Source of the DNA: Octopus bimaculoides
Taxonomy: Eukaryota
Direction of reading: 5' to 3'
Assembly (NCBI RefSeq): GCF_001194135.2
Contig: NC_069002.1
Coordinates: 23,870,633-23,934,632 of the forward strand
DNA: 64,000 nucleotides
Part shown: one piece after another, positions 5,380 to 59,943 of the stretch
How the letters are laid out: every line of letters starts with the position of its first letter
Position numbering within the stretch: the first letter of the stretch is position 1
Notes under the pieces: model-generated
Databases searched by the model: none
Told to the model about the DNA's origin: nothing
Seen by the model: only the letters and a program-made list of their open reading frames with translations
Made by a program: the position numbers and the translations under genes

Positions 5380-5532
5380 TGTGCTGTGGGTAAGTAGCTT
5401 GCTTACCAACCACATGGTTTCAGGTTCAGTCCCACTGCGTGGTACCTTGGGCAAGTGTCTTCTACTATAGGCTTGGGCCGAACAAAGCCTTGTGAGTGAA
5501 TTTGGTAGACGGAAATTGAAAGAAGTCTGTCG

Positions 5533-5583
<51 letters not shown>

Positions 5584-5924: not shown

Positions 5925-6315
5925 ACACAGGTGTGGCTGTGTGGTCAGAAGCTTGCTTCCCAACCACATAGTTTTGGGTTCAGTCCTATTGTGTGGCACC
6001 TTGAGCAAGTGTCTTCTACTATACCCTCAGGCCAACCAAAGCCTTGTGAGTGGATTTAGTAGACAGAAACTGAAAGAAGCCCTTTGTAAATATAAATGTA
6101 TATATATTTGTGTGTGCGTCTGTGTTTGTCCCCCCACCATCGCTTGACAAACGATGTTAGTGTGTTTACGTCCCCTTAACTTTGAAGTTTGGCAAAAGCG
6201 ACCAATAGAATAAGTACTAGACTTACAAAGAATGAGTCCTGAGGTCGATTTGTTCAACTAAAGGTGGTGCTCCAGCATGGCCATAGTCAAATGACTGAAA
6301 CAAATAAAAGAATAT
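5925..6315 (+). mobile_element. SINE family A, full length
   Basis: Follows the previous copy in tandem; same head and tail. Confidence 0.8.
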
Positions 6316-9807: not shown

Positions 9808-9867
9808 GTATAGTAACTACTTTCATCTATGATATAAATTTTCTAACTAGCTACTTTGCTTCACATC

Positions 9868-9990
9868 ACCCCTCCTCCCTCACCCCTCCTCCCTCACCCC
9901 TCCTCCCTCACCCCTCCTCCCTCACCCCTCCTCCCTCACCCTCACCCTCCTCCCTCACCCCTCCTCTCTTACCCCTCCTCTCTCACCCCT
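9868..9990. repeat. Pyrimidine minisatellite, unit ~CACCCCTCCTCCCT
   Basis: About 8 direct 14-nt repeats visible. Confidence 0.85.
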
Positions 9991-10177
9991 CCTCCTTCGT
10001 CCCTCCTCCCTTGCTCACATGGCTCCCACGTAACCATTGGCCATCTTTCTTTCTTCTCCTAACTTGTGTTTCTTTCTTTCCATTAGCTGGAACAAGCAAG
10101 ACATGTTCTTGTTTGTCTCCTGTCCATGCTTGATTTATGCATTCGCTACCACAACCTCATTTAGGATTAGCAGCCCT

Positions 10178-10258
10178 TCCTGTTTGTTTTCACTGTCCTG
10201 TTTGTTTTCACTGTCCTGTTTGTTTTCACTGTCCTGTTTGTTTTCACTGTCCTGTTTG
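10178..10258. repeat. 18-bp tandem repeat CTGTCCTGTTTGTTTTCA, about 4 copies
   Basis: Visible directly in the sequence. Confidence 0.85.
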
Positions 10259-10648
10259 TATTACCAATTTTGACTCCGCAAAATCCTAAATTTTATTTTA
10301 TTTGCTTTGAGAGAGCAACTGTCTTATCGAAAGTGTACATTGTTGTTAAATGCTCAAAATACGAGACTAGAAAAACAGCCAACAACTGATGAAGGGCCGT
10401 TCTTTATGTTGTTTGTTTTGTTTTCCATTTGTGTCTCATTGTTCGAAAGAATAGTTCATGTTCCATGTACTCGTGCTTTGTATTTTTTTGTTGTACATGT
10501 TTCGTGACGTCTTGTGCCCACATATGCATATATATATATATATATATANNNNNNNNNNNNNNNNNNNNNNNNNNNNNNNNNNNNNNNNNNNNNNNNNNNN
10601 NNNNNNNNNNNNNNNNNNNNNNNNNNNNNNNNNNNNNNNNNNNNNNAC

Positions 10649-10860
10649 CTACACCTTAGCCCTTTCATGGCGTCTGATGTGGCTTTTTAAACCAGACAGT
10701 GTTTTGAAAAAACACCCACACAGATTGCACCTCTGATTTGCACTACCAATACCTGCAAGTAAGTTCTGCTCATTGTGGATCCTAACATGTCTTTTATATA
10801 TGTATGATGGACTCATCCGTTGAAGACAACATGAGTATGCAGCTTTTTTGCCAGACAACC
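10649..10860 (-). mobile_element. 3' end of an RTE-type LINE ORF with terminal C2H2 finger
   Basis: CNLCGCFFKTLSGLKSHIRRH fits C-x2-C-x12-H-x3-H and is followed shortly by a stop; single finger; resembles RTE C-termini. Confidence 0.55.
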
Positions 10861-11187
10861 TACACAAATGATTTGTTAATAGTGATCAGATGTTTGTGCC
10901 CTACATTAGCTCATTCCCTCCATCAAGTCAACGTTACCTGAACAGGTGCACCATGTACCACATGTCAGGTATTGAACTGATCACAGTGCAATGTGAGATG
11001 AAGTGTTTTGCTCAAGAACATTATAAACCCATGATCTCACAATCATGAATATAACACCCTGATCATTAGGTCATGGTATATATACATTATATATACATTA
11101 TATATATATATATATCATGTGTGTTTTTAAACGAGCAAATGGTGCGTTTGTTTAAATCTCTTGTAAACAATATGTCTTGTCACTTAT

Positions 11188-12143: not shown

Positions 12144-12624
12144 GTAGGTGATCTGTTCTTCTATACACGATATTTAATATGCATGTGAGTGCATTTACAT
12201 ATATCTGTCCATACACACTCTCACACACACGATACACAATATATATACAAACACACACAAACATACTATATATATATTATATATGTAATATGTACATAAT
12301 ATATACATTCATATATGCCCAAATATATATATANNNNNNNNNNNNNNNNNNNNNNNNNNNNNNNNNNNTCTTATATATATACAAGTTTAATATACATATG
12401 CATACACTATATGTATACATGCATATACACACAAGCTACATATGTAAAGTTCCACAGAAAATATGAGTATAATATAAATTCACACAGACATTATGACATA
12501 CACACAAAATATGTATACATGCACACAATATACATAATATGCACAATATATATATACACACACAATATATGTAATATGCACAATATATATATACACACAC
12601 ACAATATATGTAATATGCACAATA

Positions 12625-12790
12625 GGTGCAGGAGTGGCTGTGTGGTAAGTAGCTTGCTTACCAACCACATGGTCCCGGGTTCAGTCCCACTGCGTGGCAC
12701 CTTGGGCAAGTGTCTTCTACTATAGCCTCGGGCCGACCAAAGCCCTGTAAGTGGATTTGGTAGACGGAAACTGAAAGAAGCCTGCCGTAT
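12625..12790 (+). mobile_element. SINE family A, 5' half, young near-consensus copy ending in a gap
   Basis: CpGs retained (CCCGGG, CTCGGGCCGACC); runs into (TA)n and then Ns. Confidence 0.8.
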
Positions 12791-13294
12791 ATATGTATGT
12801 ATATATANNNNNNNNNNNNNNNNNNNNNNNNNNNNNNNNNNNNNNNNNNNNNNNNNNNNNNNNNNNNNNNNNNNNNNNNNNNNNNNNNNNNNNNNNNNNN
12901 NNNNNNNNNNNNNNNNNNNNNNNNNNNNNNNNNNNNNNNNNNNNNNNNNNNNNNNNNNNNNNNNNNNNNNNNNNNNNNNNNNNNNNNNNNNNNNNNNNNN
13001 NNNNNNNNNNNNNNNNNNNNNNNNNNNNNNNNNNNNNNNNNNNNNNNNNNNNNNNNNNNNNNNNNNNNNNNNNNNNNNNNNNNNNNNNNNNNNNNNNNNN
13101 NNNNNNNNNNNNNNNNNNNNNNNNNNNNNNNNNNNNNNNNNNNNNNNNNNNNNNNNNNNNNNNNNNNNNNNNNNNNNNNNNNNNNNNNNNNNNNNNNNNN
13201 NNNNNNNNNNNNNNNNNNNNNNNNNNNNNNNNNNNNNNNNNNNNNNNNNNNNNNNNNNNNNNNNNNNNNNNNNNNNNNNNNNNNNNNNNNNNNN

Positions 13295-14976: not shown

Positions 14977-15307
14977 GGTGCATGGCTTAGTGGTTAGGGC
15001 ATTCGGCTCATAGTCGTAAGGTCGTGAGTTCAATTCCTGGCAACGCATTGTTTCTTTGAGGTAGACACTTTATTTCACATTGCTCCAGTACACTCAGCTG
15101 GCAAAAATGAGTAGTACCTGTAATTCAAAGGGGCCAGCCTTGTCACACTCTGTGTCACACTCTGTGTCACACTGAATACCCCTGAGAACTACATTAAGGA
15201 TACATGTGTCTGTGGAGTGCTCAGCCACTTGCACTTTAATTCCATGAGCAAGCTTTTCCGTTGATCAGATCAGCTGGGACCCTCGTTATAACTGACAGAG
15301 TGCTCCT
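14977..15307 (+). mobile_element. tRNA-derived SINE, family B
   Basis: A box TGGCTTAGTGGTTAGG, B box GAGTTCAATTCC, body CTCAGCTGGCAAAAATGAG...GGGCCAGCCTTGTCACAC; related copies near 20380-20640, 52735-53120, 53478-53855 and 60985-61370. Confidence 0.75.
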
Positions 15308-15843: not shown

Positions 15844-16185
15844 NNNNNNNNNNNNNNNNNNNNNNNNNNNNNNNNNNNNNNNNNNNNNNNNNNNNNNNNN
15901 NNNNNNNNNNNNNNNNNNNNNNNNNNNNNNNNNNNNNNNNNNNNNNNNNNNNNNNNNNNNNNNNNNNNNNNNNNNNNNNNNNNNNNNNNNNNNNNNNNNN
16001 NNNNNNNNNNNNNNNNNNNNNNNNNNNNNNNNNNNNNNNNNNNNNNNNNNNNNNNNNNNNNNNNNNNNNNNNNNNNNNNNNNNNNNNNNNNNNNNNNNNN
16101 NNNNNNNNNNNNNNNNNNNNNNNNNNNNNNNNNNNNNNNNNNNNNNNNNNNNNNNNNNNNNNNNNNNNNNNNNNNNNNNNNNNNN

Positions 16186-17110
16186 GGGTCCTCGGAAAGG
16201 AAGCTTTGCTGTTTGAAGAGAATTGTGAAAAACAAACCCCGTTTGAAGGCTCCTGACACTGCAAAACAGCTAGAAGTTAGTCGAAGAATGTGTGTTACAT
16301 ATCTGCATAAGCTTGGGTGTTATGGACGAGCAGCTAGAAGAAAACCTCTCTTTCAACCAATTAATATCATGAAAAGAAAGAAATGGGCTGAGGAGATGTC
16401 AGAAAAATCCAGTTCATTTTGGGATAGAGTGATTTTCTCAGATGAATCCAGATTTTCATTATTTTTAGACAGTGGACGTGTTTGGGTCTGGAGGCTTTCC
16501 AATCAAGAATTTGATTTGAAACGAGTCCAACCAACTGTGAAATATGGCAGTATCTCTATAATGGTATGGGGAGCTGTCTCCAGCAATGGTCGTCCTGAAC
16601 TGATCGAATGTGTTGGAACCATAAACTCTGAAAAATACATCGTAATACTTAAGCAAGGACTACTTCTGATGTGTTCACACGATAACATAACAAAAAATGA
16701 GTTTTTATTCATGGAAGATGGGGCTCCATGCCACACAGCAAAAGGAAATCAACAATGGCTGACTGAAAAAGCTTCCTTGGCCGAGCAAATCTCCTGACAT
16801 GAACCCAATTGAAAATGTTTGGAACATACTAGATAGAGCTATACGAAAAACTGGACAGATACCTAAATCTAAAAATGAATTGTTTCGATTGTTGCGTGAA
16901 AAGTGGGCAGAAATTCCACAAGAGACAATCACAAAGCTCATCAGTTCAATGCCAAAAAGAGTTTCTGAATTAAAAACTGCAAAGGGAATGTCAACTAAAT
17001 ACTAAAGTATGTAGTCCTACCTATCGATTACATTCCAATTGTTCGCTTTGCGTATTAAATGAAAGATTTTGAAAATTAAAAGGTGTCTATTTACTTCCTG
17101 CATGTTTGTG
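16186..17110 (+). mobile_element. Tc1-family transposon, right part, frameshifted transposase
   Basis: VIFSDESRF, FMEDGAPCH and WPSKSPDMNPIENVW motifs; frameshifting deletion near 16770; end ...CATGTTTGTG followed by TA; left end lies in the N gap. Confidence 0.9.
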
Positions 17111-17524
17111 TATATGTATCTATTTATTTATGTGTGTGTGTGTGTGTCTTTGTGACTCTGTTTGTCCCACCACCATCATTTGACAACTAATGCTGGTGTG
17201 GTTATGTCTTCATAGCATACCAGTTCAGCAAAAGAGACTGATAGAATGAGTACCAGGCTTAAAAAGAGAAAGTACTTGGCTTGATTCAATTGACTAAAAA
17301 TTCTTGAAGGTCGTGCCCCAGGATGGCTGCAGTCTAATAACTTAGACAAGTAAAAGAATATGTATGTTTGTGTGTGTGTGTGTGTGTGTGTGTAAACTTC
17401 AAAGATAAGTCCTGAGGTCAATTTCTTCCACTAAAACTATTTAAGGTGATGCTGAAGCATGGCCACAATCAACTGAGTAAAAGAATAACAGAATTACTTA
17501 TGATGGGATAGTGTGAATGGCAAA

Positions 17525-18720
17525 AAGTTAAATATCTTAATTTTTGAGAACATTTCATTGGGAGTCTAGGTCCTTGTAGGTAAAGGTGTAGATAACCAGC
17601 AGCAGAGGACATACTGGAGTTTCTGGCTAGAGTTCAATACCATCCTGAGCAGAACCAAATGGTTTTTCACTTACTTTTTGTTTCTACATCTGCAAAACTA
17701 TTAAATTATATAATAATAATTAATGTAGGAGTGGCTGTATGGTAAGAATCTTGCTTCCCAACCTTTCTGGGTTTAGTCCCACTGCTTGGCACCTTGGACA
17801 AGTCTTTTTCTGTAGGCTCAGACTGGTCAAAGACTTGTGAGTGAATTTGGTAGACAGAAACTGAAAGAAGCCAGTTGTGTGTGTGTGTGTGCTCGGAAAG
17901 ATGAGATATTTAAATCAATTTTTATTATTGATTGGACGCAATTATAGATTTAAGTATCTCAGCTTTGACAGCAATTATTGGGCGGGAGGGACCCGGTAGA
18001 CTGGTGGGTAAAGGTGAGTGTAGATGAGCTGGACACTCTGAAGTGTCCTGCCAAGGGTTCAAACCTGGTCAGGATAGGGGAAGAAGGTGAGAGTCTTTTT
18101 ATTTTTTTTTCGTTTATACAAAAATATTTCTAGATAGAGATCGAAACCTCTACCTTCATACAAGGTTGTTAGTTAAATTACTAACACCTTTACCTATTAG
18201 GCCATCAAACCAACACCTAAGAAACAACTTAAAAATGAGATATTTAAATCTATTTTTATTATTGATTTGATGCTGTGGTAGATTTAATTATCTTATTTTC
18301 CACAGAAATTAACAGGGCACCCAATGTAAGTAAAGACACAGATAAATAAGCAGTGATAGGACATCCTGCATAATCTGGTAGTGAATTCAAGTCAGACCAG
18401 AGTGTAAGATTTTTCATTTAAATTTTTTTTTTTTGTTTAATGGTTTCAAAAAAAAAAACTTTAATAAGTGGAGATTGAAACCTCTATCATCTTGCAATGC
18501 TATTCAACTAATTATAAATACCTTTATTCAGAAGGTCCTCTCTGCAGCAACAAGAACAAGCTTAAAAATGGGATATTTATTTAAATCTATTCTCAATAAT
18601 GATCTGATGCTGTGTTAGATCTAAATATCTCATTTTTTACTGAACCTAGAAGTGGGAGACCCAGTAAACCAGTGGGTTAATGGCATGGTGAGGCAGAACA
18701 ACAGCTAAGATGTGAGATAA
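17525..18720. repeat. ~333-bp-period array of head-to-head tRNA-like units with junction hairpins
   Basis: Hairpin motif starts at 17901, 18235 and 18568; A-box-like GGTAAAGG and B-box-like GTTCRA motifs on alternating strands; SINE A inserted at 17725-17890. Confidence 0.6.
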
Positions 18721-18739
18721 TGTGCAATATTATCCAACT

Positions 18740-19556
18740 CTCTCTTTCTTGGTCTACCCTAGGTCCACAACTTCTTGGGGCAGAGTCCTCAAGTACCTCC
18801 GCCATAGGGTCCTATCAGAAGCAGCTGTCATTAGACCTTGTAGATGGATTCCCAAGCATGACCAACACAGGCTATGGACATTATCCAACCATTTCATTCT
18901 TGGCCTACCCCTTGGTCTCCTATCTGCAGAGGGGGTAGAGTCCTCAAGCACCTTCTCCACAGGGTCCTTCTTGTTTTTGGTCTACCCCTTGGTCTCCTGC
19001 CAGTTGGCTCGGCTTGAAGAATTCGTCTTACGACCCTTTCTTGCAACATTTTAAATACATGTCCGTACTACCGCACAGGTGACTTCTCAATATGGAGCAG
19101 TAGATGCACGGTGTGCAGCGACTCCCTGATCACCGAGCTACACACCCTGTGGAATAACTTTCTTGCAGACACCCTTCGGAGGAAAACCATTTTGGTTGAT
19201 CGTATTCTCGATCCTGCTCTTTCGGTCATTATTCAACACTCATGACAGAAATTCCATGTTGTCTGCAAATATCAGCTAAGCCATTCAATGAATGCTGGAG
19301 ATTATCTTCTGATGAACCAAGTAGCACCATGTTGTCTTCAAATATCAGCTAACCAACCTGATCATTGTGATACCATTTCCACAACTGCTGCACATGTTAA
19401 TCCAGTTATGAAAGCTATGAAGAAGAGAGGTAATGATATATATTCCTGCTGAGTCTAACACTCATGTTGAAAGCCTTTGACTTAGCACCATCTGGGCATT
19501 TGTATAGGGACTTCATGGCAACCAGAAGCTGTCCATTAATCCCAAAGTCCTGAAAA
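18740..19556 (-). mobile_element. RTE-type LINE remnant (RT and C-terminal region)
   Basis: RRPRGRPRMKWLDNV..LMTAASDRTLWR and FGINGQLLVAMKSLY peptides; degraded xADD-like motifs; many stops. Confidence 0.75.
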
Positions 19557-20116
19557 NNNNNNNNNNNNNNNNNNNNNNNNNNNNNNNNNNNNNNNNNNNN
19601 NNNNNNNNNNNNNNNNNNNNNNNNNNNNNNNNNNNNNNNNNNNNNNNNNNNNNNNNNNNNNNNNNNNNNNNNNNNNNNNNNNNNNNNNNNNNNNNNNNNN
19701 NNNNNNNNNNNNNNNNNNATCAAGCAGTGGTGGGAAGACGCACACACGTGGGGATCTGATCAAAGATTTTACAATTAAACAAAATAGGAGAAAACTTTTC
19801 AAATATAAATGGATTGGAAGTATACAAGAATAAACATTATTTTCCATCTTCTTGTTTAGTTTTGTTTCATTTTGAAAAACAAATATATATTTTATGGTTT
19901 ATTAATTATTGTTTATATTTTGAATTATATATATATAAGGGGGTACCAAAAATCTATTAAATGCTAAGGGCTTCATCAGGTCTTAATGCGGCCCTGGTCT
20001 TGGATTTCACTTTAAACTTTAAAATAATATTCCATGTGGTTTATATGATCGGAAATGTAATATCGAAGTGTTCATAGTGCCATTGTGAGGATCTGATCAA
20101 AGATTTTGCAATTTAA

Positions 20117-25872: not shown

Positions 25873-27404
25873 CATTAGATGGAATAATCTAAATGGTAAA
25901 GTGTTAAAAGAATTTACTGTCTGAAGATCTTGAAATGCCAAAACAGAGACTGACTTGGTACAACATTGCAAATCTGGGAGGGTATTTCAATTTAGTGACA
26001 CTACCTTCACAATGCAAATCCTATTTAGTTTCCTCACCCAAAACACAATTTACACAGCAAATATTCTACACAGTTTCCCTATCAAAATTAGAAATCCCAT
26101 GATGAACCAATCTATTGGATGTCGTTATAATTCACTGGTCACAATGTGTTTTGCATCATTTTAGCTTTTGAATGTCACCTTGCTGATTTGGCAAGCAGGC
26201 CAACATTCCCCCACACCAGAAGGCTATTCGATTGCAGGGTTATCCATTTACAGCTAAGTGGACTGGGGCAACATGAAATGAAGTGTTTTGCTCAAGAACA
26301 CAATGCGCTCCCCACTCTATAATTGAACTCACGACCTGAAGATCCTAAGTGCAATGCCCTAACCCACTATGCCATGCGCCTCCACACTCTACAATAAATA
26401 GAAAAGTAAGAGTCGCTCAAGCATCCACCATCATCCTTTTAACAAAAACTATGTTATTTTACTGCAGAGCCTGTGTTTCTCTGGCCTTTATTCTTGATTC
26501 TCTTTTAACCCTAATGTGACCACCTCTGCCTTATAGATGCATTAGTTGGAAAAATAAATCTATTATACTATTTCTGTAATGACCATCATTGTCTTTACAT
26601 CCAATTTTTCCATGCTGGTATGAGGTGAATGAAACTCACAATAGCAGTGTTCAATGGCTGGATGCTTTTCCTGTTGCCAACGTTTTTTTTTTTTTTTTTA
26701 ATAAACTGTTTTTCCTTTCATTGAACTTTACACTTTGAAATGTTCAAAACCACTAAGGTATTGCTTACAGAATATGTAACAATCATCTCCAGTTCTCATA
26801 TATAATGTCAATATATGAAGACACAGAGACATGTGCACACATGCATCAACACATACACATGCATACACACTCATTCAAACACTGGATTACCAATATCATA
26901 ACCACCAATTCTTCTTCAAACAACCATTGTAATTTTACGTCCATTTTTCTCTGCTGGCATGGGTTAGATGATTTCATAAGATGCATTAGGACAGCGGCCC
27001 ACTTCTTACTCTAATGTCACACTTTTGACATGGTTTCTATGGCTGGATACTCTTTCTAATGCATACCAACTATTTTACAGTGTACTGGCTGGGGTATACT
27101 ATGGGCTTCTTTACAGTTTCCTTCTACCAAATTTCACTTACAAAACCTGGGTCAGTTTGATGCTGTCATAAAATACACTTGCCATACACTAGGACAAGGT
27201 TGCAAACATCATTAGCATGTTGGAAGAAATGCTAAGTTCAAATCCCACTGAGGTCAACTTTAGTTTTCATCTTTTCAAGGTCAATAAAATAAAGTACCAG
27301 TCAAGTACTATGGGCAATGTGATCGACATGTCCCCTCTCCTCAATATAGCTGATATTGATCCCTGCAATGGGCTAGCGCCCTTTTCAAGGTGAATGTTAT
27401 GATC

Positions 27405-27835
27405 GAGATTACTTGGCATGCAATAAGCACCATTCATGCGTGGATCATTGCCAGTGCCGCCTGACTAGCTCCCCATGCTGGTGATGCGTAAAAGCATCAT
27501 CCGAATGTGGTCGATGTCAGCACCCCTGCCCCGACTGGCTCCTGTGCTGGTGGCATGTAAAAAGCACCATCTGAATGTGGCTGATGCCAGTGCTGCCTGA
27601 CTGGCTCCCATGCCAGTGGCATGTAAAACACACCCACTACACTCTGGGAGTGGTTGGCGTTTGGAAGGACATCTGTAGGAAGGGCAGCTGTAGGAAGGGC
27701 AGCTGAAGAAGCCATGCCAGATCAGATTGGAGCCTGATGCAGCCTCCTGGCTTGCCTGTCCCCAGTCAAAACCGTCCAACCCATGCCAGCATGGAAAACA
27801 GGCGTTAAACGATGATGATGATGGTGATGATGATC
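27405..27835 (+). mobile_element. Retroelement family D with three ~66-nt internal tandem units
   Basis: Units AAGCACCATT...GCCAGT...ACTGGC...GGCATGTAAA; (GAT)n tail. Confidence 0.7.
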
Positions 27836-31029: not shown

Positions 31030-31790
31030 AACAAATACAAAACTCTATTCTCCTTCAAAGTAGGATCCTTTAACTTCAATGCATTTTCTGCATGTCAGTT
31101 ACTTCACGAAGACCCCTTAAAAGTCCTCCAAAGTGAAGTTGTTCTCACAGCCTCCATCTTCTCAATGCTGTTAAGATTACTGCCCAAGGTTCTCCTTCAG
31201 CTTGAGGAATGACCAAAAGTCACAGGTAGCAAGGTCTAGACTATGGGGAAGGTGAGGGACAGTTTTGATGCCCATCTCTTTCAAGTAGTTGGTTACCAAG
31301 ATGGAACTGTGGACTGGTGTGTTGTTCTGGTGCTGATGCCACCAACCTGAGTGGAAGAGCCTTGGTCTTTTGCAAAAAGAAAATTTCTTCCTGAACTCCC
31401 TCAGAACCTCCACAATGTATTCATTGTTGATTGTTTGGCCAGAGGGAACCCAATGGATGTAGATGATGGCCTTGTGGTTGTAAAAGGGATCATCATGGTG
31501 GCCTTGTTTTGCCTTGGCCTTCTTGGATCTGGATGAGTGAGGATACTTCTATTGGGCACTCTGTCTATTGGTCTCTGGATCATAACATTACACCCAGCTT
31601 TCATCACAGATCACCAGAGACTAAAGTAATCTTAGATTGGAGATAATAAGCTCAACCATTTCCCTTCTGTCACCAATGCTTATTTCCTTCGGTTCATCTC
31701 TGACCACCCTTGGAACGAAGTTCAAGTTTTCGGCATGTTCAGATCTTTATGAATAATTCTGTGTAGAGTTGCCTCGTCAACTCAGAACTG
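31030..31790 (-). mobile_element. Mariner transposase remnant
   Basis: HQNNTPVHSSILVT, HLPHSLDLATCDFW and ESWxYCYDPETxRQSxQW-like motifs (degenerate DD34D-type). Confidence 0.8.
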
Positions 31791-49764: not shown

Positions 49765-50140
49765 ACAGGTGCAGGTGTGCACTAAGAAGCTTGCTTCCCA
49801 ACCACATGGTTCCAAGTTCAATCTTACTGTGTGGCACCTCGGGCAAGTGTCTTCTACTATAGCCTCAGGCTGACCAAAGCCTTGTGAGTGGATTTGGTAG
49901 ATGGAAACTGAAAGAAGCTCATCATATATATGTGTGTGTCTTTGCTTCTATGTTAGTACCCCACCACCACTTGACAACTGGTGTTGGTGTGTTTACATCC
50001 CTGTAACTTAACAGTTCAGCAAAAGAGTGATAAAATAAGTACCAGGCTTTTGAAAATATGTACTGGGTTTGATTCATTTTACTAAAATTTCTTCAAGGCA
50101 GTGCTCCAGCTTGACCAGTCTAGTTATTGAAACAAATGAG
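49765..50140 (+). mobile_element. SINE family A, full length
   Basis: Head, body and tail recognisable. Confidence 0.8.
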
Positions 50141-51489
50141 AGATAGAAGTTTCTCTTTGAAAGGAGTGGGGTCATAATGATGTAAGAGGTATCCATCAAG
50201 AAGCAGGAATGAAATCAACAGAAACAGCAAAATATAGGAAAATATATAAAGTCAGATAAACATTTGTGTGAAAGCTATGTTTGGAGAGACAACACCTAGA
50301 AAAGGAAATCAGAAAATATAATCGAATACATATGAGAAAAAAGGAATGGAAGCATGGAAAGATGGTGCAAAGTGGGTTCCTCCTACTGGTGTGATGTGTG
50401 ACTGCCGTTGTACTGTAATTGCTATTTTATGCTAGTAGCCACAGTAGTTACTAATCATTGGATACCGTTGTATCTCTTCATACCAGAATAATAATACACT
50501 AACTTCTCTCTTACTGTTGCTGATAGCTCCACAAGATACCAACTAGAAGTGTCGACTCAGCTCTTTGACTCTCGACCCTCACTTGATGACCAGCTACTGG
50601 TCTATTTATAATGGCTGGTTCCTACTACTTTTTACCAGATGGGGTATACAGTTTCACTATACAACAAAAGAAAAAGGAGCTATGGAGAGAGTGTTTGTGA
50701 ATTGAGAGAGCTTTGAGTGAATAACAGGGCATGATTTGGAGATAAGTTGTTTTTGGGGAAGAAATGATTATGTTAAGGGCATCTGAATACGGTAACAAGT
50801 ATAAGACATGCTGAGGTGATGCGAGTGTAATATAAGGGGTTATGAGATTAGGATCGGGTGGGGGATAGCAGGTTTATGTGTACAGAGCGCTTCAGAGTGT
50901 TTAGGTGGAAAGTCAGCTGTGATGAAAGAGTGATTTGCAAAGAACTGAATAAGCAGAAAATGAAGGAAAAGTGAAAGAAAGATGTGAGAAAATTGAAGAA
51001 GGAATACTGACATACATGTAACATATTGTGAAATGTAATTCAATATAGAAATCAATTGCATTTCTTCAATAATCACATGCATATGTGTGTATACATTCAC
51101 TCACATATACATACACACACACTCATCCAGGCACACATACAAACACATATGTGTGTGTGTGTGGCCTAGTGGTCAGGGTGTTGCATTTACAATGGCTAGA
51201 TTGTGGTGTTTGATTCCCAGACTAAGTGACACATTGTGTTCTTGAGGAAAACACTTCCTTTCACATTTCTGCTCCCCACTTAGCTTTAAATGGACAACTC
51301 CTTGACAGACTAACCTTCCAATCAATTGGGGAGGGGCGGATGTCAGCCTGTTTGCCAACGATGCAGAGCACATTGTGACCAGCAATGTAACAACATCCAA
51401 TAATGTTGAAAGTGTTTTTGGTCACTTGATTGCATGATATATACATATATGTAATTACATATATATATATATATATAATGTGGTCGATG

Positions 51490-51737: not shown

Positions 51738-52027
51738 TATTTACATTTGACGGATACTTGTCGTCATCTTGTCTGTTGTTAACACAACGTTTTGGCTGAT
51801 ATACCCTCCAGCCTTCATCAGGTGTCCTGGGGAAATTTTGAACCTGGGTTCTCATTCCTAAGACATTTTTCGATATTATTATTTGACGGATGTTTGTCCT
51901 CATCTTGTTTGTTGTTAACGCGACGTTTTGGCTGATATACCCTCTAACCTTCATCAGGTGTCTTGGGGAAATCTTGAACCTGGGTTCTCATTCCTAAGAC
52001 ATTTTTCAATATTATTATTATTATTAC

Positions 52028-52369: not shown

Positions 52370-52720
52370 TTCACTTATTTGACTGCGACCATGCTGGAGC
52401 ACTGCTCTGAAGGGTTTTAGATCCCAGGACTTGTTTCTTTTTCAAGCTTAGTACTTATTCTATCAATCGTTTGCTGAACCACTAAGTTACGGGGATATAA
52501 ACACACTAACACCAGTTGTCAAGCAGTGGTGGAGTGACAACCACAAAAACAAAGACATGCACACACACATATATATGATGAGCTTCTTTCATTTTCTGTC
52601 TGCCAAACCCACTCACAAAGATTTGGTTGACCCGAGGCTATAGTGGAAGACAGTGGGACTGAACCCAAAACCATGTTTGGGAAACAAGCTTCTTACCACA
52701 CAGCCATACCTGCACCTTGC
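52370..52720 (-). mobile_element. SINE family A
   Basis: Reverse complement of the family head and tail. Confidence 0.75.
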
Positions 52721-52734
52721 ATACTACAAATCGT

Positions 52735-53120
52735 TGTGGTACTCCATTGGTTGCAACGATGAGGGTTCCAATTGATCCGATCAATGGAACAGCCTGCTAG
52801 TGAAATTAACGTGCAAGTGGCTGCGCACTCCACAGACACATGTACCATTAATGTAGTTCTCTGGGAGATTCAGCGTGACACAGAGTGTGACAAGGCTGAC
52901 CCCTTCAACATACAGGTACAACAGAAACAGGAAGTAAGATTGAGAGAAAGTTGTGGTGAAAGAGTACAGCACAGAAGGGTTCACCACCGCTGCCAGAGCC
53001 TCGTTGAGCTTTAGGTGTTCTTGCTCAATAAACACTCACAACGCTTGGTCTGGGAATTGAAACCGCGATCCTACCATCACGAGTTTTCTGCCCTAACCAC
53101 TGGGCTATTGCACCTCCACC
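52735..53120 (-). mobile_element. SINE family B
   Basis: Reverse complement similar to 14977-15307, with an inserted or alternative middle segment. Confidence 0.7.
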
Positions 53121-53477: not shown

Positions 53478-53855
53478 CCTATCTATCATGGCACTCTGTT
53501 GGTTACGACGGCAAAGGTTCCAGTTGATTCTATAAATGGAACAGCCTGCTCATGAAAAATTCATGTGCAAGTGGTTGAGCACTCCACAGACATGTGTGCC
53601 CTTCACGTAGTTCTCCAGGAGATTCGGCATGACACAGAGTGTGACAAGGCTGGTCCTTTCAAATACAGGTAGAAACATTGAGAGAAAGTTGTGGTGAAAG
53701 AGTACAACAGGGTTCGCCACCACCCACTGCTGAAGCCTTGTGGAGCTTAATGTGTTTTCGCTCAATAAACATTCACAACACCTCGTCTGGGAATTGAAAC
53801 TGCGATCCTATGACCACGAGTCCGCTGCCTTAACCACTGAGCCATTGCAACTCCA
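53478..53855 (-). mobile_element. SINE family B
   Basis: Close paralog of 52735-53120. Confidence 0.7.
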
Positions 53856-55440: not shown

Positions 55441-55499
55441 TTAAAAGTGGGAGTTACTCAATATGTAAGTGAAGTTGTCGAAGTGGCTGATGACAGTAC

Positions 55500-55945
55500 C
55501 ACCTCATTGGCACCTGTGCCGGTGGCACCTAAAAAGCACCATTCAAGCGTGGTCATTGCCAGTGCTGCCTGACTGGCTGCCATGATAGTGGCACATAAAG
55601 AGCACCATTCGAATGTGGGCGATGCCAGTGCTGGCTGACTGGTCCCATGCTGATGACACGTAAAATGCACCATTCAAGCATGGTCATTGCTAGTGCTGCC
55701 TGATTGGCTCCCATGCCGGTGGCACATAAAAAGCACTATTCAAGCGTGGTTGATGCCAGTACCACCTGACTGGCCCTCATGCCAGTGGCACGTAAAAAGT
55801 ACCCACTACACTCTCAGAGCAGTTGGTGATAGGAAGGGCATCTAGCTGTAGAAACTTTGCCAGATCAGATTGGAGCCTGGTGCAGCCTTTTGGCTTGCCA
55901 GCCCTCAGTCAAACCATTGAACCCATGCTAGCATGGAAAGATGAC
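55500..55945 (+). mobile_element. Retroelement family D with ~4.5 tandem 65-66 nt units
   Basis: GCAC anchor at 55536, 55602, 55667 and 55733. Confidence 0.75.
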
Positions 55946-59217: not shown

Positions 59218-59261
<44 letters not shown>

Positions 59262-59415
59262 TGGGCTCCTTTCAGTTTCCATTTACTAAATCTATTCAAG
59301 TCTTTGGTTGTCCCAAGGCTGTAGTAGAAGGCCCTTGCCCAAGGTGCCACATAGTGGGACTGAACCTGAAACCATGTGAATGGGAAGCAAGCTTCTTACC
59401 ACACAGCTATACCTT
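59010..59415 (-). mobile_element. SINE family A
   Basis: Reverse complement of the family head and tail with a central (CA)n. Confidence 0.7.
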
Positions 59416-59943
59416 AGTTGAAGTATAATTGAAAATATAGTCATAAACCACCTCCTCATCATTCTACATCATTCTGTGTTTGTATGTATGTATGTGTGTA
59501 TATGTATATATCTTTCATCATGTTGAACAATTAATTCCTTCACAATTTTTTCTCTCCCTTTTTTGTTCAGTCTCTATTCTTTTCCTCTCAGTTCTTTTTG
59601 TTGAAGAGCTTAGGCTCAAAATGTCAAAGACTTTTCCCATTCTTCCCGAACGTCAAATACATCTGCTTGTTGTTCCTTCACCTGTCTTTGTCTTCTGTAA
59701 ATTTGAACTACACACACATACACACATAGAATGAGTTTCTTGTAGTTTCCATTTATCAAATCCACTCACAAGGTTTTGGTTGGCCTGGGGCTACAGCAGA
59801 AGACACTCCTGCTTCGCCTATGGTGCTGCACAATGAGAATGAACTTGCAATCAAGTGGTTAACAAGTTAACCATTTAACAACACAACCCCCAAAATATTT
59901 TTCCTGTTTTTACTGATTTGTTTTGTTTCAATCTATTTTACAG

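What the first reader, a model, noticed from the sequence alone, without database searches (positions are those of the whole stretch)
17525..18720. 333-bp-period array of head-to-head tRNA-like units sharing a palindromic upstream element
Seen: the motif ATGAGATATTTAAATCTA...~28 nt...TAGATTTAAATATCTCAT (about a 20-bp stem) recurs at 17901, 18235 and 18568, with spacings of 334 and 333. Each arm leads outward into a unit with an A-box-like GGTAAAGG and a B-box-like GTTCRA; neighbouring units meet tail-to-tail at T-rich tracts. The minus unit at 18212-18128 folds as D arm GCCT/AGGT, a 7-bp TGTTAGT/ACTAACA arm, a variable arm ACCTT/AAGGT and a T arm TAGAG/CTCTA. The plus unit near 17985-18075 keeps a 7-bp GGACACT/AGTGTCC variable arm. 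Further plus units lie at ~17560-17655, ~18315-18400 and ~18650-18700, and a second minus unit at ~18465-18545. Acceptor stems and anticodon loops are non-canonical, and the units have diverged strongly while the junction hairpin is conserved. Inference: a decayed or atypical cluster of long-variable-arm tRNA-like Pol III units driven from a shared bidirectional AT-rich element. I do not recognise this arrangement from known SINE families.
Basis: partly seen in the sequence, partly recalled or inferred. Interest (0 to 1): 0.72.

Follow-up and report, generated by a model that had tools for sequence, protein, structure and literature searches.

The report
Decayed inverted tRNA-like repeat array
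A short, old and partly broken tandem repeat in an octopus genome is built from back-to-back copies of a tRNA-like unit that share a better-conserved AT-rich hairpin; the architecture is curious, but nothing shows that it is active or that it exists anywhere else.

Summary
Three 70-nt hairpins (22-nt arms TAGATTTAAATATCTCATTTTT, 26-nt loop) lie 334 and 333 bp apart at 17897-18637. Each arm leads outward into a 140-167-bp unit with the same order of blocks: a TATA-like arm, GGTAAAGGTG, a GGTTCAA-like block and a T-run. The array therefore alternates in orientation (p0, m0 remnant, p1, m1, p2, m2, p3). It is old. Plus units are 51-58% identical to each other and the two minus units 68%. A SINE replaces most of m0, and a retrotransposon-like tail cuts p3. 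The tRNA reading is only weakly supported. ARAGORN finds units only at relaxed thresholds, Rfam finds nothing, and my class II tRNA covariance model gives m1 10.8 bits (E 0.36). The unit bodies have no consensus fold. The hairpin is significantly better conserved than the bodies (81% against 52%, p = 9e-6), by sequence rather than by compensating changes. No other copy was found in the window, in 51 kb of other Octopus DNA, in metagenome or viral contigs, or in papers. Read data were not available. Best reading: a relic tandem amplification of an inverted pair of tRNA-like Pol III-type units with a shared promoter-like palindrome. MITE, plain satellite and small-RNA hairpin readings are not excluded.

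The parts
17524..17683 (+). Unit p0. It has a partial arm (TTAAATATCTTAATTTTT, 17528-17545), GGTAAAGGTG at 17579, GAGTTCAATACC at 17631 and T-runs at 17664-17679. The left edge of the array lies inside the arm, next to a SINE tail.
   Evidence: nhmmer E 9e-30; ARAGORN -ps70 'Leu taa' at 17564-17651
17684..17723 (-). Remnant of unit m0. Only its middle part survives, and it aligns to the middle of m2. Its 3' T-arm and T-run and most of its 5' part are lost.
   Evidence: alignment, read by eye
17724..17891 (+). Inserted tRNA-derived SINE (GGAGTGGCTGTATGGTAAG...) with a (TG)n tail. It interrupts the array.
   Evidence: about 20 copies in the window at 65-82% identity; ARAGORN -ps75 'Arg tct' at 17717-17790
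17897..17966 (.). Hairpin 1: arms 17897-17918 and 17944-17966, loop about 25 nt.
   Evidence: (-26.1 kcal/mol, z -5.3)
17945..18112 (+). Unit p1, the most G+C-rich and best kept plus unit. TTTAAGTA at 17949-17956, GGTAAAGGTG at 18007, 7-bp GGACACT/AGTGTCC stem, GGGTTCAAACC at 18056, T5 and T9 at 18096-18110.
   Evidence: ARAGORN -ps85 hit at 17990-18076, one of only 7 in 64 kb
18113..18252 (-). Unit m1, the best cloverleaf-like fold. T5 terminator-like run at 18124-18120.
   Evidence: RNAfold z -3.1; ARAGORN -ps80 at 18128-18210; class II tRNA model 10.8 bits, E 0.36
18231..18299 (.). Hairpin 2: arms 18231-18252 and 18279-18299.
   Evidence: (-21.0 kcal/mol, z -4.5)
18279..18441 (+). Unit p2, strongly decayed towards A+T. 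AGTAAAGACA, GAATTCAAGTC, T5 and T12 at 18410-18434.
   Evidence: (E 1e-25)
18442..18589 (-). Unit m2. It is 68% identical to m1, and its cloverleaf is no longer favoured (z +1.5). T11 at 18458-18448.
18564..18637 (.). Hairpin 3: arms 18564-18585 (with a 4-nt insertion) and 18616-18637.
   Evidence: (-19.5 kcal/mol, z -4.0)
18616..18728 (+). Unit p3, cut off after about 113 nt.
   Evidence: E 1e-10
18729..19556 (-). Sequence that truncates the array. It has an internal 151-155-bp duplication, and its minus-strand ORFs look like the C-terminal tail of a non-LTR retrotransposon (…RPRGRPRMKWLD…DRTLWRR…). An assembly gap follows at 19557-19718.
   Evidence: No Pfam match, so the retrotransposon reading rests on my own knowledge of such tails.

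Best explanation
This is the relic of a local DNA-level amplification. An ancestral unit of about 150 bp looked like a Pol III gene of the tRNA type. It had a TATA-like box about 30 nt before the start, internal A-like and B-like blocks 45-55 nt apart, a stem between them, and a T-run terminator. That unit, together with its 5' flank, was first duplicated in inverted orientation. The two promoter flanks then faced each other and formed the palindrome. The resulting 334-bp inverted dimer was next copied in tandem at least 3.5 times. The unit bodies have since decayed towards A+T and have been hit by a SINE and a second insertion. The promoter-like palindrome, both arms and loop, changed much more slowly. 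This implies either past constraint, for example shared TATA and upstream elements serving both directions, or local homogenisation. Shown: the anatomy, the order of duplications, the decay, and the excess conservation of the hairpin. Inferred: tRNA ancestry, Pol III transcription, and the promoter role of the palindrome. I expect no present function.
For: All units share the same order and spacing of blocks. m1-m2 identity is 68%, p-p 51-58% and p-m 45-52%, so the inversion came before the tandem copying. The m profile finds p0 and the p profile finds m1 (E 0.014 and 0.008). Without the arms, the m-body profile still has p0's A-block as its best non-self hit (E 0.11). p0 and m1 are 89% complementary over 18 nt around GGTAAAGGTG (pair I7). 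At -ps85 ARAGORN gives 7 hits in 64 kb and p1 is one of them; at -ps80, p1 and m1 are among 31 hits, and their drawn cloverleaves have a long variable arm. m1 ranks 7th in the window with a class II tRNA covariance model, just below true tRNA-derived SINE heads. The best non-self hits of the unit profile fall on two tRNA-like SINE heads, on the same strand and, where the alignment is long enough to judge (53127-53052), in the same order of blocks. TTTAAATA lies 38-41 nt before the ARAGORN 5' ends, and T-runs follow each unit. The units carry an upstream flank and a terminator, which retroposed SINE copies do not. Hairpin identity is 81% against 52% for the bodies (p 9e-6), with only 39 of 70 matches expected from base composition. 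In the bodies, G/C sites are kept at 39% and A/T sites at 61%, which fits neutral decay. A SINE insertion and a truncation interrupt the array.
Against: No tRNA signal reaches significance. ARAGORN finds 0 at default. Rfam finds nothing. Human tRNA sequence profiles miss all the units. The covariance-model E-value is 0.36 for one unit only. There is no consensus structure across the unit bodies. The B-like block has an extra T in both m units. Homology between p and m bodies rests on about 33 nt once the arms are removed. There is no evidence of transcription, because reads were not available. Only one locus is known, so the family context is missing.
Confidence: 0.45

Rival explanations
1. 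It is a tandemly duplicated MITE or foldback-type DNA transposon. The element would be the 308 bp from one right arm to the next left arm. The 22-nt arms would be its terminal inverted repeats, the p and m halves its subterminal inverted repeats, and the T/A-rich tract its centre. The A-like and B-like blocks would be coincidence.
For: There are perfectly placed inverted termini of 20-22 nt (pairs I1-I4). TA dinucleotides lie next to GATTTAAAT... at most arm ends. The size and overall dyad symmetry are typical of MITEs. The region is full of transposons, including a Tc1-like element 0.5 kb away.
Against: The 26-nt spacer between 'elements' is as conserved as the arms (80%). This means element and spacer were copied together rather than inserted independently. 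No other copy of the arm occurs in the 64 kb, and profile searches found no unit or hairpin in 51 kb of other Octopus DNA. The end of the neighbouring Tc1-like element does not resemble the arms (by eye). The TA is part of the palindrome, so it is not evidence of a target duplication.
Confidence: 0.17
2. It is a plain low-copy tandem repeat (a satellite-like array with a complex monomer made of two inverted subunits), with no tRNA ancestry and no function. The Pol III-like signals would be chance features of an AT-rich sequence.
For: All formal tRNA tests are non-significant. A period of 334 is twice 167, which fits nucleosome-sized satellite monomers. From my own knowledge, satellites with inverted subunits are known in Tribolium beetles. 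A/T sites decay more slowly than G/C sites here, which explains part of the apparent block conservation.
Against: Four signals occur in the right order and spacing in every unit. Three independent weak tRNA-likeness signals point the same way. Hairpin conservation exceeds what composition predicts (57 observed against 39 expected). There are only 3.5 copies at about 64% identity, unlike a homogenised satellite.
Confidence: 0.2
3. The conserved hairpins are themselves the functional part. They would be a cluster of small-RNA (miRNA-like) precursors, or the units would still be transcribed as a lineage-specific tRNA-like Pol III RNA family.
For: The hairpins fold far better than shuffles (z -4 to -5.3). 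Arms and loop are conserved well above the flanks. There is one compensating AU-to-GC change and several G-U changes. Weak Rfam resemblance to a miRNA precursor model: MIR1223, 18 bits, E 1.3.
Against: The continuous stem is only 22-26 bp of weak A-U pairs, with a 26-nt loop and no basal stem in hairpin 2. The covariation term is unfavourable. The MIR1223 score is far below its gathering score of 77. The array is broken by insertions, and hairpin 3 carries a 4-nt insertion in one arm. Any unit transcript would run away from the hairpin. The arm sequence appears in no searched paper or held supplement, although the supplements do not list precursors.
Confidence: 0.08

Closest known systems
Tandem or clustered tRNA genes and tRNA pseudogene arrays of animals (own knowledge: Xenopus 3.18-kb tRNA repeat, zebrafish chromosome 4 arrays)
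   Same: DNA-level repeats that carry Pol III units together with their flanks and T-run terminators, in both orientations.
   Different: These units fail every standard tRNA detector. The period is much shorter, the orientation alternates strictly, and the upstream flank forms a conserved palindrome.
tRNA-derived SINEs of cephalopods (own knowledge: octopus OK/OR SINEs, Ceph-SINEs), represented by the SINE copies in this window
   Same: A degenerate tRNA-like head with A-like and B-like blocks. Scores with a tRNA covariance model are similar: 10.8 bits for m1 against 9.7-13.6 for SINE heads.
   Different: There is no LINE-derived or A-rich tail. The units end in T-runs and carry a conserved upstream element. 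They are arranged as an inverted tandem array rather than as dispersed insertions, and no other copies were seen.
MITEs and MITE-derived tandem repeats of molluscs and insects (own knowledge: pearl and Helentron-associated elements of bivalves, Tetris/TIR-220 of Drosophila virilis)
   Same: Short inverted termini around an AT-rich unit of about 300 bp that has become tandemly repeated.
   Different: Here the 'flanking' spacer is conserved with the element. No dispersed copies or target duplications are shown. The internal halves carry Pol III-like blocks.
Satellite DNAs with inversely oriented subunits (own knowledge: Tribolium madens and T. brevicornis satellites)
   Same: A tandem monomer made of two inverted subunits that can form long dyad structures.
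   Different: Those are high-copy and homogenised. This array has 3.5 copies at about 64% identity in a transposon-rich region.

Membership tests
Canonical tRNA gene | Detected as a cloverleaf by a standard tRNA finder | tested here: not met
   ARAGORN at default settings finds 0 genes in 64 kb. Units appear only at -ps85 (p1), -ps80 (p1 and m1) and -ps70, where the background is 2.9 hits per kb.
Canonical tRNA gene | Significant score with a tRNA covariance model | tested here: not met
   Rfam gives no tRNA or tRNA-Sec match at E<=10, even on 266 nt alone. With my class II model R1, m1 scores 10.8 bits (E 0.36) and the other units are not listed.
Canonical tRNA gene | Structure kept across copies | tested here: not met
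   RNAalifold on 5 units predicts 0 consensus pairs.
tRNA-derived SINE | tRNA-related head with A and B boxes | tested here: inconclusive
   The A-like and B-like blocks are 45-55 nt apart. The scores are like those of true SINE heads but are not significant.
tRNA-derived SINE | Retroposed copies: dispersed, with a LINE-like or A-rich tail and no upstream flank | tested here: not met
   The units end in T-runs, keep a shared upstream element, and lie in an inverted tandem array. No other copies occur in the window or in 51 kb of Octopus DNA.
MITE | Terminal inverted repeats | tested here: met
   The 20-22-nt arms are 87-95% complementary and would bound a 308-bp element.
MITE | Target-site duplication and independent dispersed insertions | tested here: inconclusive
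   The TA next to the arms is part of the palindrome. The spacer is conserved (80%), which argues for copying of element plus spacer. No other copies were found in about 115 kb.
Satellite DNA | Long homogeneous head-to-tail arrays, high copy number | tested here: not met
   At this locus there are 3.5 periods at about 64% identity, which is below the Tandem Repeats Finder threshold. Genome-wide abundance is not testable.
miRNA precursor | Hairpin with a stem of about 33-35 bp including a basal stem, and small-RNA reads forming a duplex | tested here: inconclusive
   The stem is 22-26 bp with a 26-nt loop. The Rfam MIR1223 score is 18 bits against a gathering score of 77. Reads were not available.
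Hammerhead-bearing tandem repeats (retrozyme or newt satellite 2 type) | Hammerhead ribozyme motif in each ~330-bp monomer | tested here: not met
   No hammerhead family appears among the Rfam matches at E<=10. There is no CUGAUGA...GAAA core by eye.
Pol III transcription unit (type 2 with upstream TATA) | TATA about -30, internal A and B boxes, T>=4 terminator | tested here: met
   Positions only. TTTAAATA lies 38-41 nt before the ARAGORN 5' ends. A-like and B-like blocks are present, though imperfect in p2, m1, m2 and p3. A T5-T12 run follows every complete unit.
Pol III transcription unit (type 2 with upstream TATA) | Transcripts with defined 5' ends and ends at the T-run | not testable with these tools

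The most novel reading that the evidence does not exclude
The locus is a worn copy of a still undescribed, octopod-specific family of Pol III-transcribed tRNA-like RNA genes. These would be organised as divergent pairs around a compact palindromic promoter (TATA, upstream element, TATA). Alternatively, the conserved palindrome itself gives rise to a small-RNA hairpin. In either case, intact and expressed arrays would exist elsewhere in the genome.
Probability: 0.08. Interest if true: 0.6.

Novelty: new variant of a known kind. Interest (0 to 1): 0.3.

Why it matters
If the promoter-like palindrome was truly under constraint, the locus would show how a small Pol III unit can be amplified as an inverted pair with a shared bidirectional promoter. 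It would also point to a possible lineage-specific small-RNA family in octopods. As it stands, it is mainly a useful annotation. The array is a low-copy composite repeat that tRNA finders and tandem-repeat finders both miss. It records the order of events: inversion first, then tandem copying, then SINE and retrotransposon insertions.

Tried and rejected
- Relatives elsewhere: a degenerate two-arm hairpin pattern gave 7 unrelated chance matches in metagenome contigs and none in viral contigs.
- Relatives through proteins: exact look-up of 10 ORFs in and around the array found none in the protein collection.
- Anchoring on the neighbouring Tc1-like ORF showed the window is octopod. It gave no copy of this locus. 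The best hit is 85% identical, so this species is not gene-called in the collection.
- The O. vulgaris and O. bimaculoides loci that were fetched hold no unit or hairpin and are not orthologous. I therefore did not spend further protein searches on array ORFs.
- Papers: no paper holds the arm sequence.
- The octopus miRNA paper's held supplements have no match, but they do not list precursor sequences, so that negative says little.
- Searches on octopus SINEs, satellites and tRNA-derived tandem repeats found no description.
- Hammerhead or retrozyme reading rejected: no Rfam hit and no core motif.
- Mitochondrial-type tRNAs (a nuclear copy of mitochondrial DNA) rejected: ARAGORN -mt finds 0.
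- By eye, the units resembled human tRNA-Leu(UAA) or tRNA-Ser. I tested this against sequences taken from PMC10359600, and it was not supported by nhmmer.
- Vault RNA, 5S and U6 rejected: no Rfam signal, and p1 has no terminal panhandle.

Full report
**Setting**

The window is draft eukaryotic DNA of about 35% G+C, rich in microsatellites and with many N gaps. A Tc1-like transposase pseudogene at 16186-17109 has its best named relatives in Octopus vulgaris and O. bimaculoides. SINE families in the window match O. bimaculoides DNA at 80-93% identity. The window is therefore from an octopod. ARAGORN finds no tRNA gene in the window, and no Rfam family reaches its gathering score.

Three hairpins lie at 17897-17966, 18231-18299 and 18564-18637. 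Their left arms start at 17901, 18235 and 18568. The 17-mer from the arm occurs 5 times at up to 3 mismatches, only here, against 0.6 expected. Each hairpin folds much better than shuffled sequence, with z from -4.0 to -5.3. Tandem Repeats Finder missed the array because neighbouring periods are only about 64% identical.

**Anatomy**

I aligned the half-periods outward from each hairpin. Plus and minus units share one plan:
- an arm (TAGATTTAAATATCTCATTTTT);
- about 35 nt of spacer;
- GGTAAAGGTG;
- 45-55 nt holding a stem;
- a GGTTCAA-like block;
- a T-run.

The array is thus a chain of units of about 140-167 bp in alternating orientation. The units meet head to head at the hairpins and tail to tail at T/A-run palindromes (pair I6).

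The two minus units are 68% identical, plus units 51-58%, and plus against minus 45-52%. The inverted pair therefore arose first, and the 334-bp dimer was then copied in tandem.

Cross-detection supports homology of the two unit types. The m profile finds p0 (E 0.014) and the p profile finds m1 (E 0.008). With the arms removed, only the block around GGTAAAGGTG still links them (E 0.11). In that block p0 and m1 are 89% complementary over 18 nt (pair I7).

**Decay**

- A SINE with about 20 copies in the window sits at 17724-17891 and replaces most of m0. A remnant of m0 survives at about 17684-17723.
- p3 stops at 18728, where a sequence begins whose minus-strand ORFs resemble a non-LTR retrotransposon tail. 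It has no Pfam match, so this reading is my own.
- The left edge of the array lies inside an arm, next to a SINE tail.
- Between periods 1 and 2, G/C sites in the unit bodies are kept at 39% and A/T sites at 61%. This is the pattern of neutral decay towards A+T.

**Is it tRNA-like?**

Signals in favour, all weak:
- At -ps85 ARAGORN gives only 7 hits in 64 kb, and p1 (17990-18076) is one of them. At -ps80, p1 and m1 are among 31 hits.
- I took thirteen human tRNA sequences from a table in PMC10359600 and built a class II tRNA covariance model from the eight Leu and Ser ones. With filters off, m1 scores 10.8 bits (E 0.36), 7th in the window. True tRNA-derived SINE heads score 9.7-13.6 bits.
- The best non-self hits of the unit profile fall on two of those SINE heads, on the same strand. 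The longer alignment (53127-53052) also runs in the same order of blocks.

Signals against:
- ARAGORN finds nothing at default settings.
- Rfam finds no tRNA or tRNA-Sec match, even when given 266 nt alone.
- Sequence profiles of human class I and class II tRNAs hit other SINE heads (E down to 3.6e-7) but none of these units.
- RNAalifold finds no consensus pairs across five units.

I conclude that tRNA ancestry is plausible but unproven, and that these are not tRNA genes.

**Pol III-like layout**

- In each arm, TTTAAATA lies 38-41 nt before the ARAGORN 5' ends of p1 and m1. With a short leader, that places it near -30.
- Runs of T5 to T12 follow every complete unit.
- The units keep an upstream flank and a terminator, which retroposed SINE copies would not. 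This points to DNA-level copying of a gene-like unit.

All of this is positional. No transcription data could be used.

**The hairpin**

Between periods 1 and 2 the hairpin is 81% identical (57 of 70), against 52% (134 of 257) for the bodies (Fisher p 9e-6). Base composition predicts only 39 matches. The loop is as conserved as the arms: 80%, against 91% and 74% for the two arms.

Conservation is by sequence, not by covariation. Of 29 predicted pairs, one shows a compensating AU-to-GC change, and the covariation term is unfavourable.

The loop conservation has three implications:
- It argues against the arms being transposon ends next to unrelated flanking DNA.
- It fits a compact shared promoter region.
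- It does not exclude an RNA hairpin.

**Relatives elsewhere**

None were found:
- in the rest of the window;
- in 51 kb of O. vulgaris and O. bimaculoides DNA;
- in metagenome contigs, where there were 7 chance hits, or in viral contigs;
- in the protein collection;
- in the literature.

These samples are tiny compared with an octopus genome, which is several gigabases by my own knowledge. The copy number therefore remains unknown.

**Verdict**

Its most likely nature is a decayed local array of an inverted pair of tRNA-like, Pol III-type units around a promoter-like palindrome (confidence about 0.45). The rivals are a plain satellite-like repeat (0.2), a tandemly copied MITE (0.17) and a functional hairpin or live RNA family (0.08).

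It is a new variant of known kinds of repeat rather than a new kind of system. Interest is modest at 0.3. It would rise if intact, expressed relatives exist.

Noticed in passing
window 16186-17109 (+): Frameshifted Tc1-like transposase pseudogene, with weak HTH_Tnp_Tc3_2 and DDE_3 Pfam matches (both below their curated cut-offs), just after an assembly gap (15844-16185). It is 93% identical to an ENA contig (L010) and 89% to an O. vulgaris copy (L008). This is what identifies the window as octopod.
   Followed up: yes
window, e.g. 496-662, 2122-2273, 5383-5533, 5929-6087, 12607-12800, 17724-17891, 49783-49938, 59239-59430: An abundant SINE (GGAGTGGCTGT.TGGTAAG... head, microsatellite tail) with about 20 copies at 65-82% identity. 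One copy sits inside the array.
   Followed up: partly
window 14977-15045 (+), 26320-26378 (-), 51155-51223 (+), 52645-52713 (-), 53046-53114 (-), 53792-53851 (-): tRNA-like heads of other SINE families. They are the best hits of human tRNA profiles and of a class II tRNA covariance model (E down to 3.6e-7), yet none reaches Rfam's tRNA gathering score.
   Followed up: partly
window 27449-27628 and 55489-55803: Two arrays of a related 66-70-bp tandem repeat (TGCCAGTGCTGCCTGACTGGCTCCCATGC...AAAAAGCACCAT...), 2.7 and 4.4 copies at 71-76% match. The second also reads as a 131-bp higher-order period.
   Followed up: no
window 51745-52019: A 136-bp unit repeated twice at 92% identity, followed by a (TAT)n microsatellite.
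   Followed up: no
window 31180-31548 (-) and 10652-10885 (-): A mariner-like transposase fragment (weak Transposase_1 match) and an ORF with a weak C2H2 zinc-finger match (below Pfam's cut-off). Both are probably transposon remnants.
   Followed up: partly
window 17176-17360 and 17395-17490 (+): By eye, one full and one partial copy of what looks like a second SINE family (…AAAAGAGACTGATAGAATGAGTACCAGGCTT…GTAAAAGAAT + microsatellite) directly to the left of the array. I did not confirm the repeat identity with a search. The Rfam SCARNA7 'match' here (27 bits against a gathering score of 65) is driven by the (TG)n tract.
   Followed up: no
window 9866-10011 and 10178-10259: A C-rich 14-bp minisatellite (about 10 copies) and a perfect 18-bp repeat (4.6 copies, 100% match) close together.
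   Followed up: no
window 18418-18464: The tail-to-tail junction of p2 and m2 is itself an 18-nt T-run/A-run palindrome (94% complementary, 11-nt spacer). The 334-bp period therefore has two centres of dyad symmetry.
   Followed up: partly
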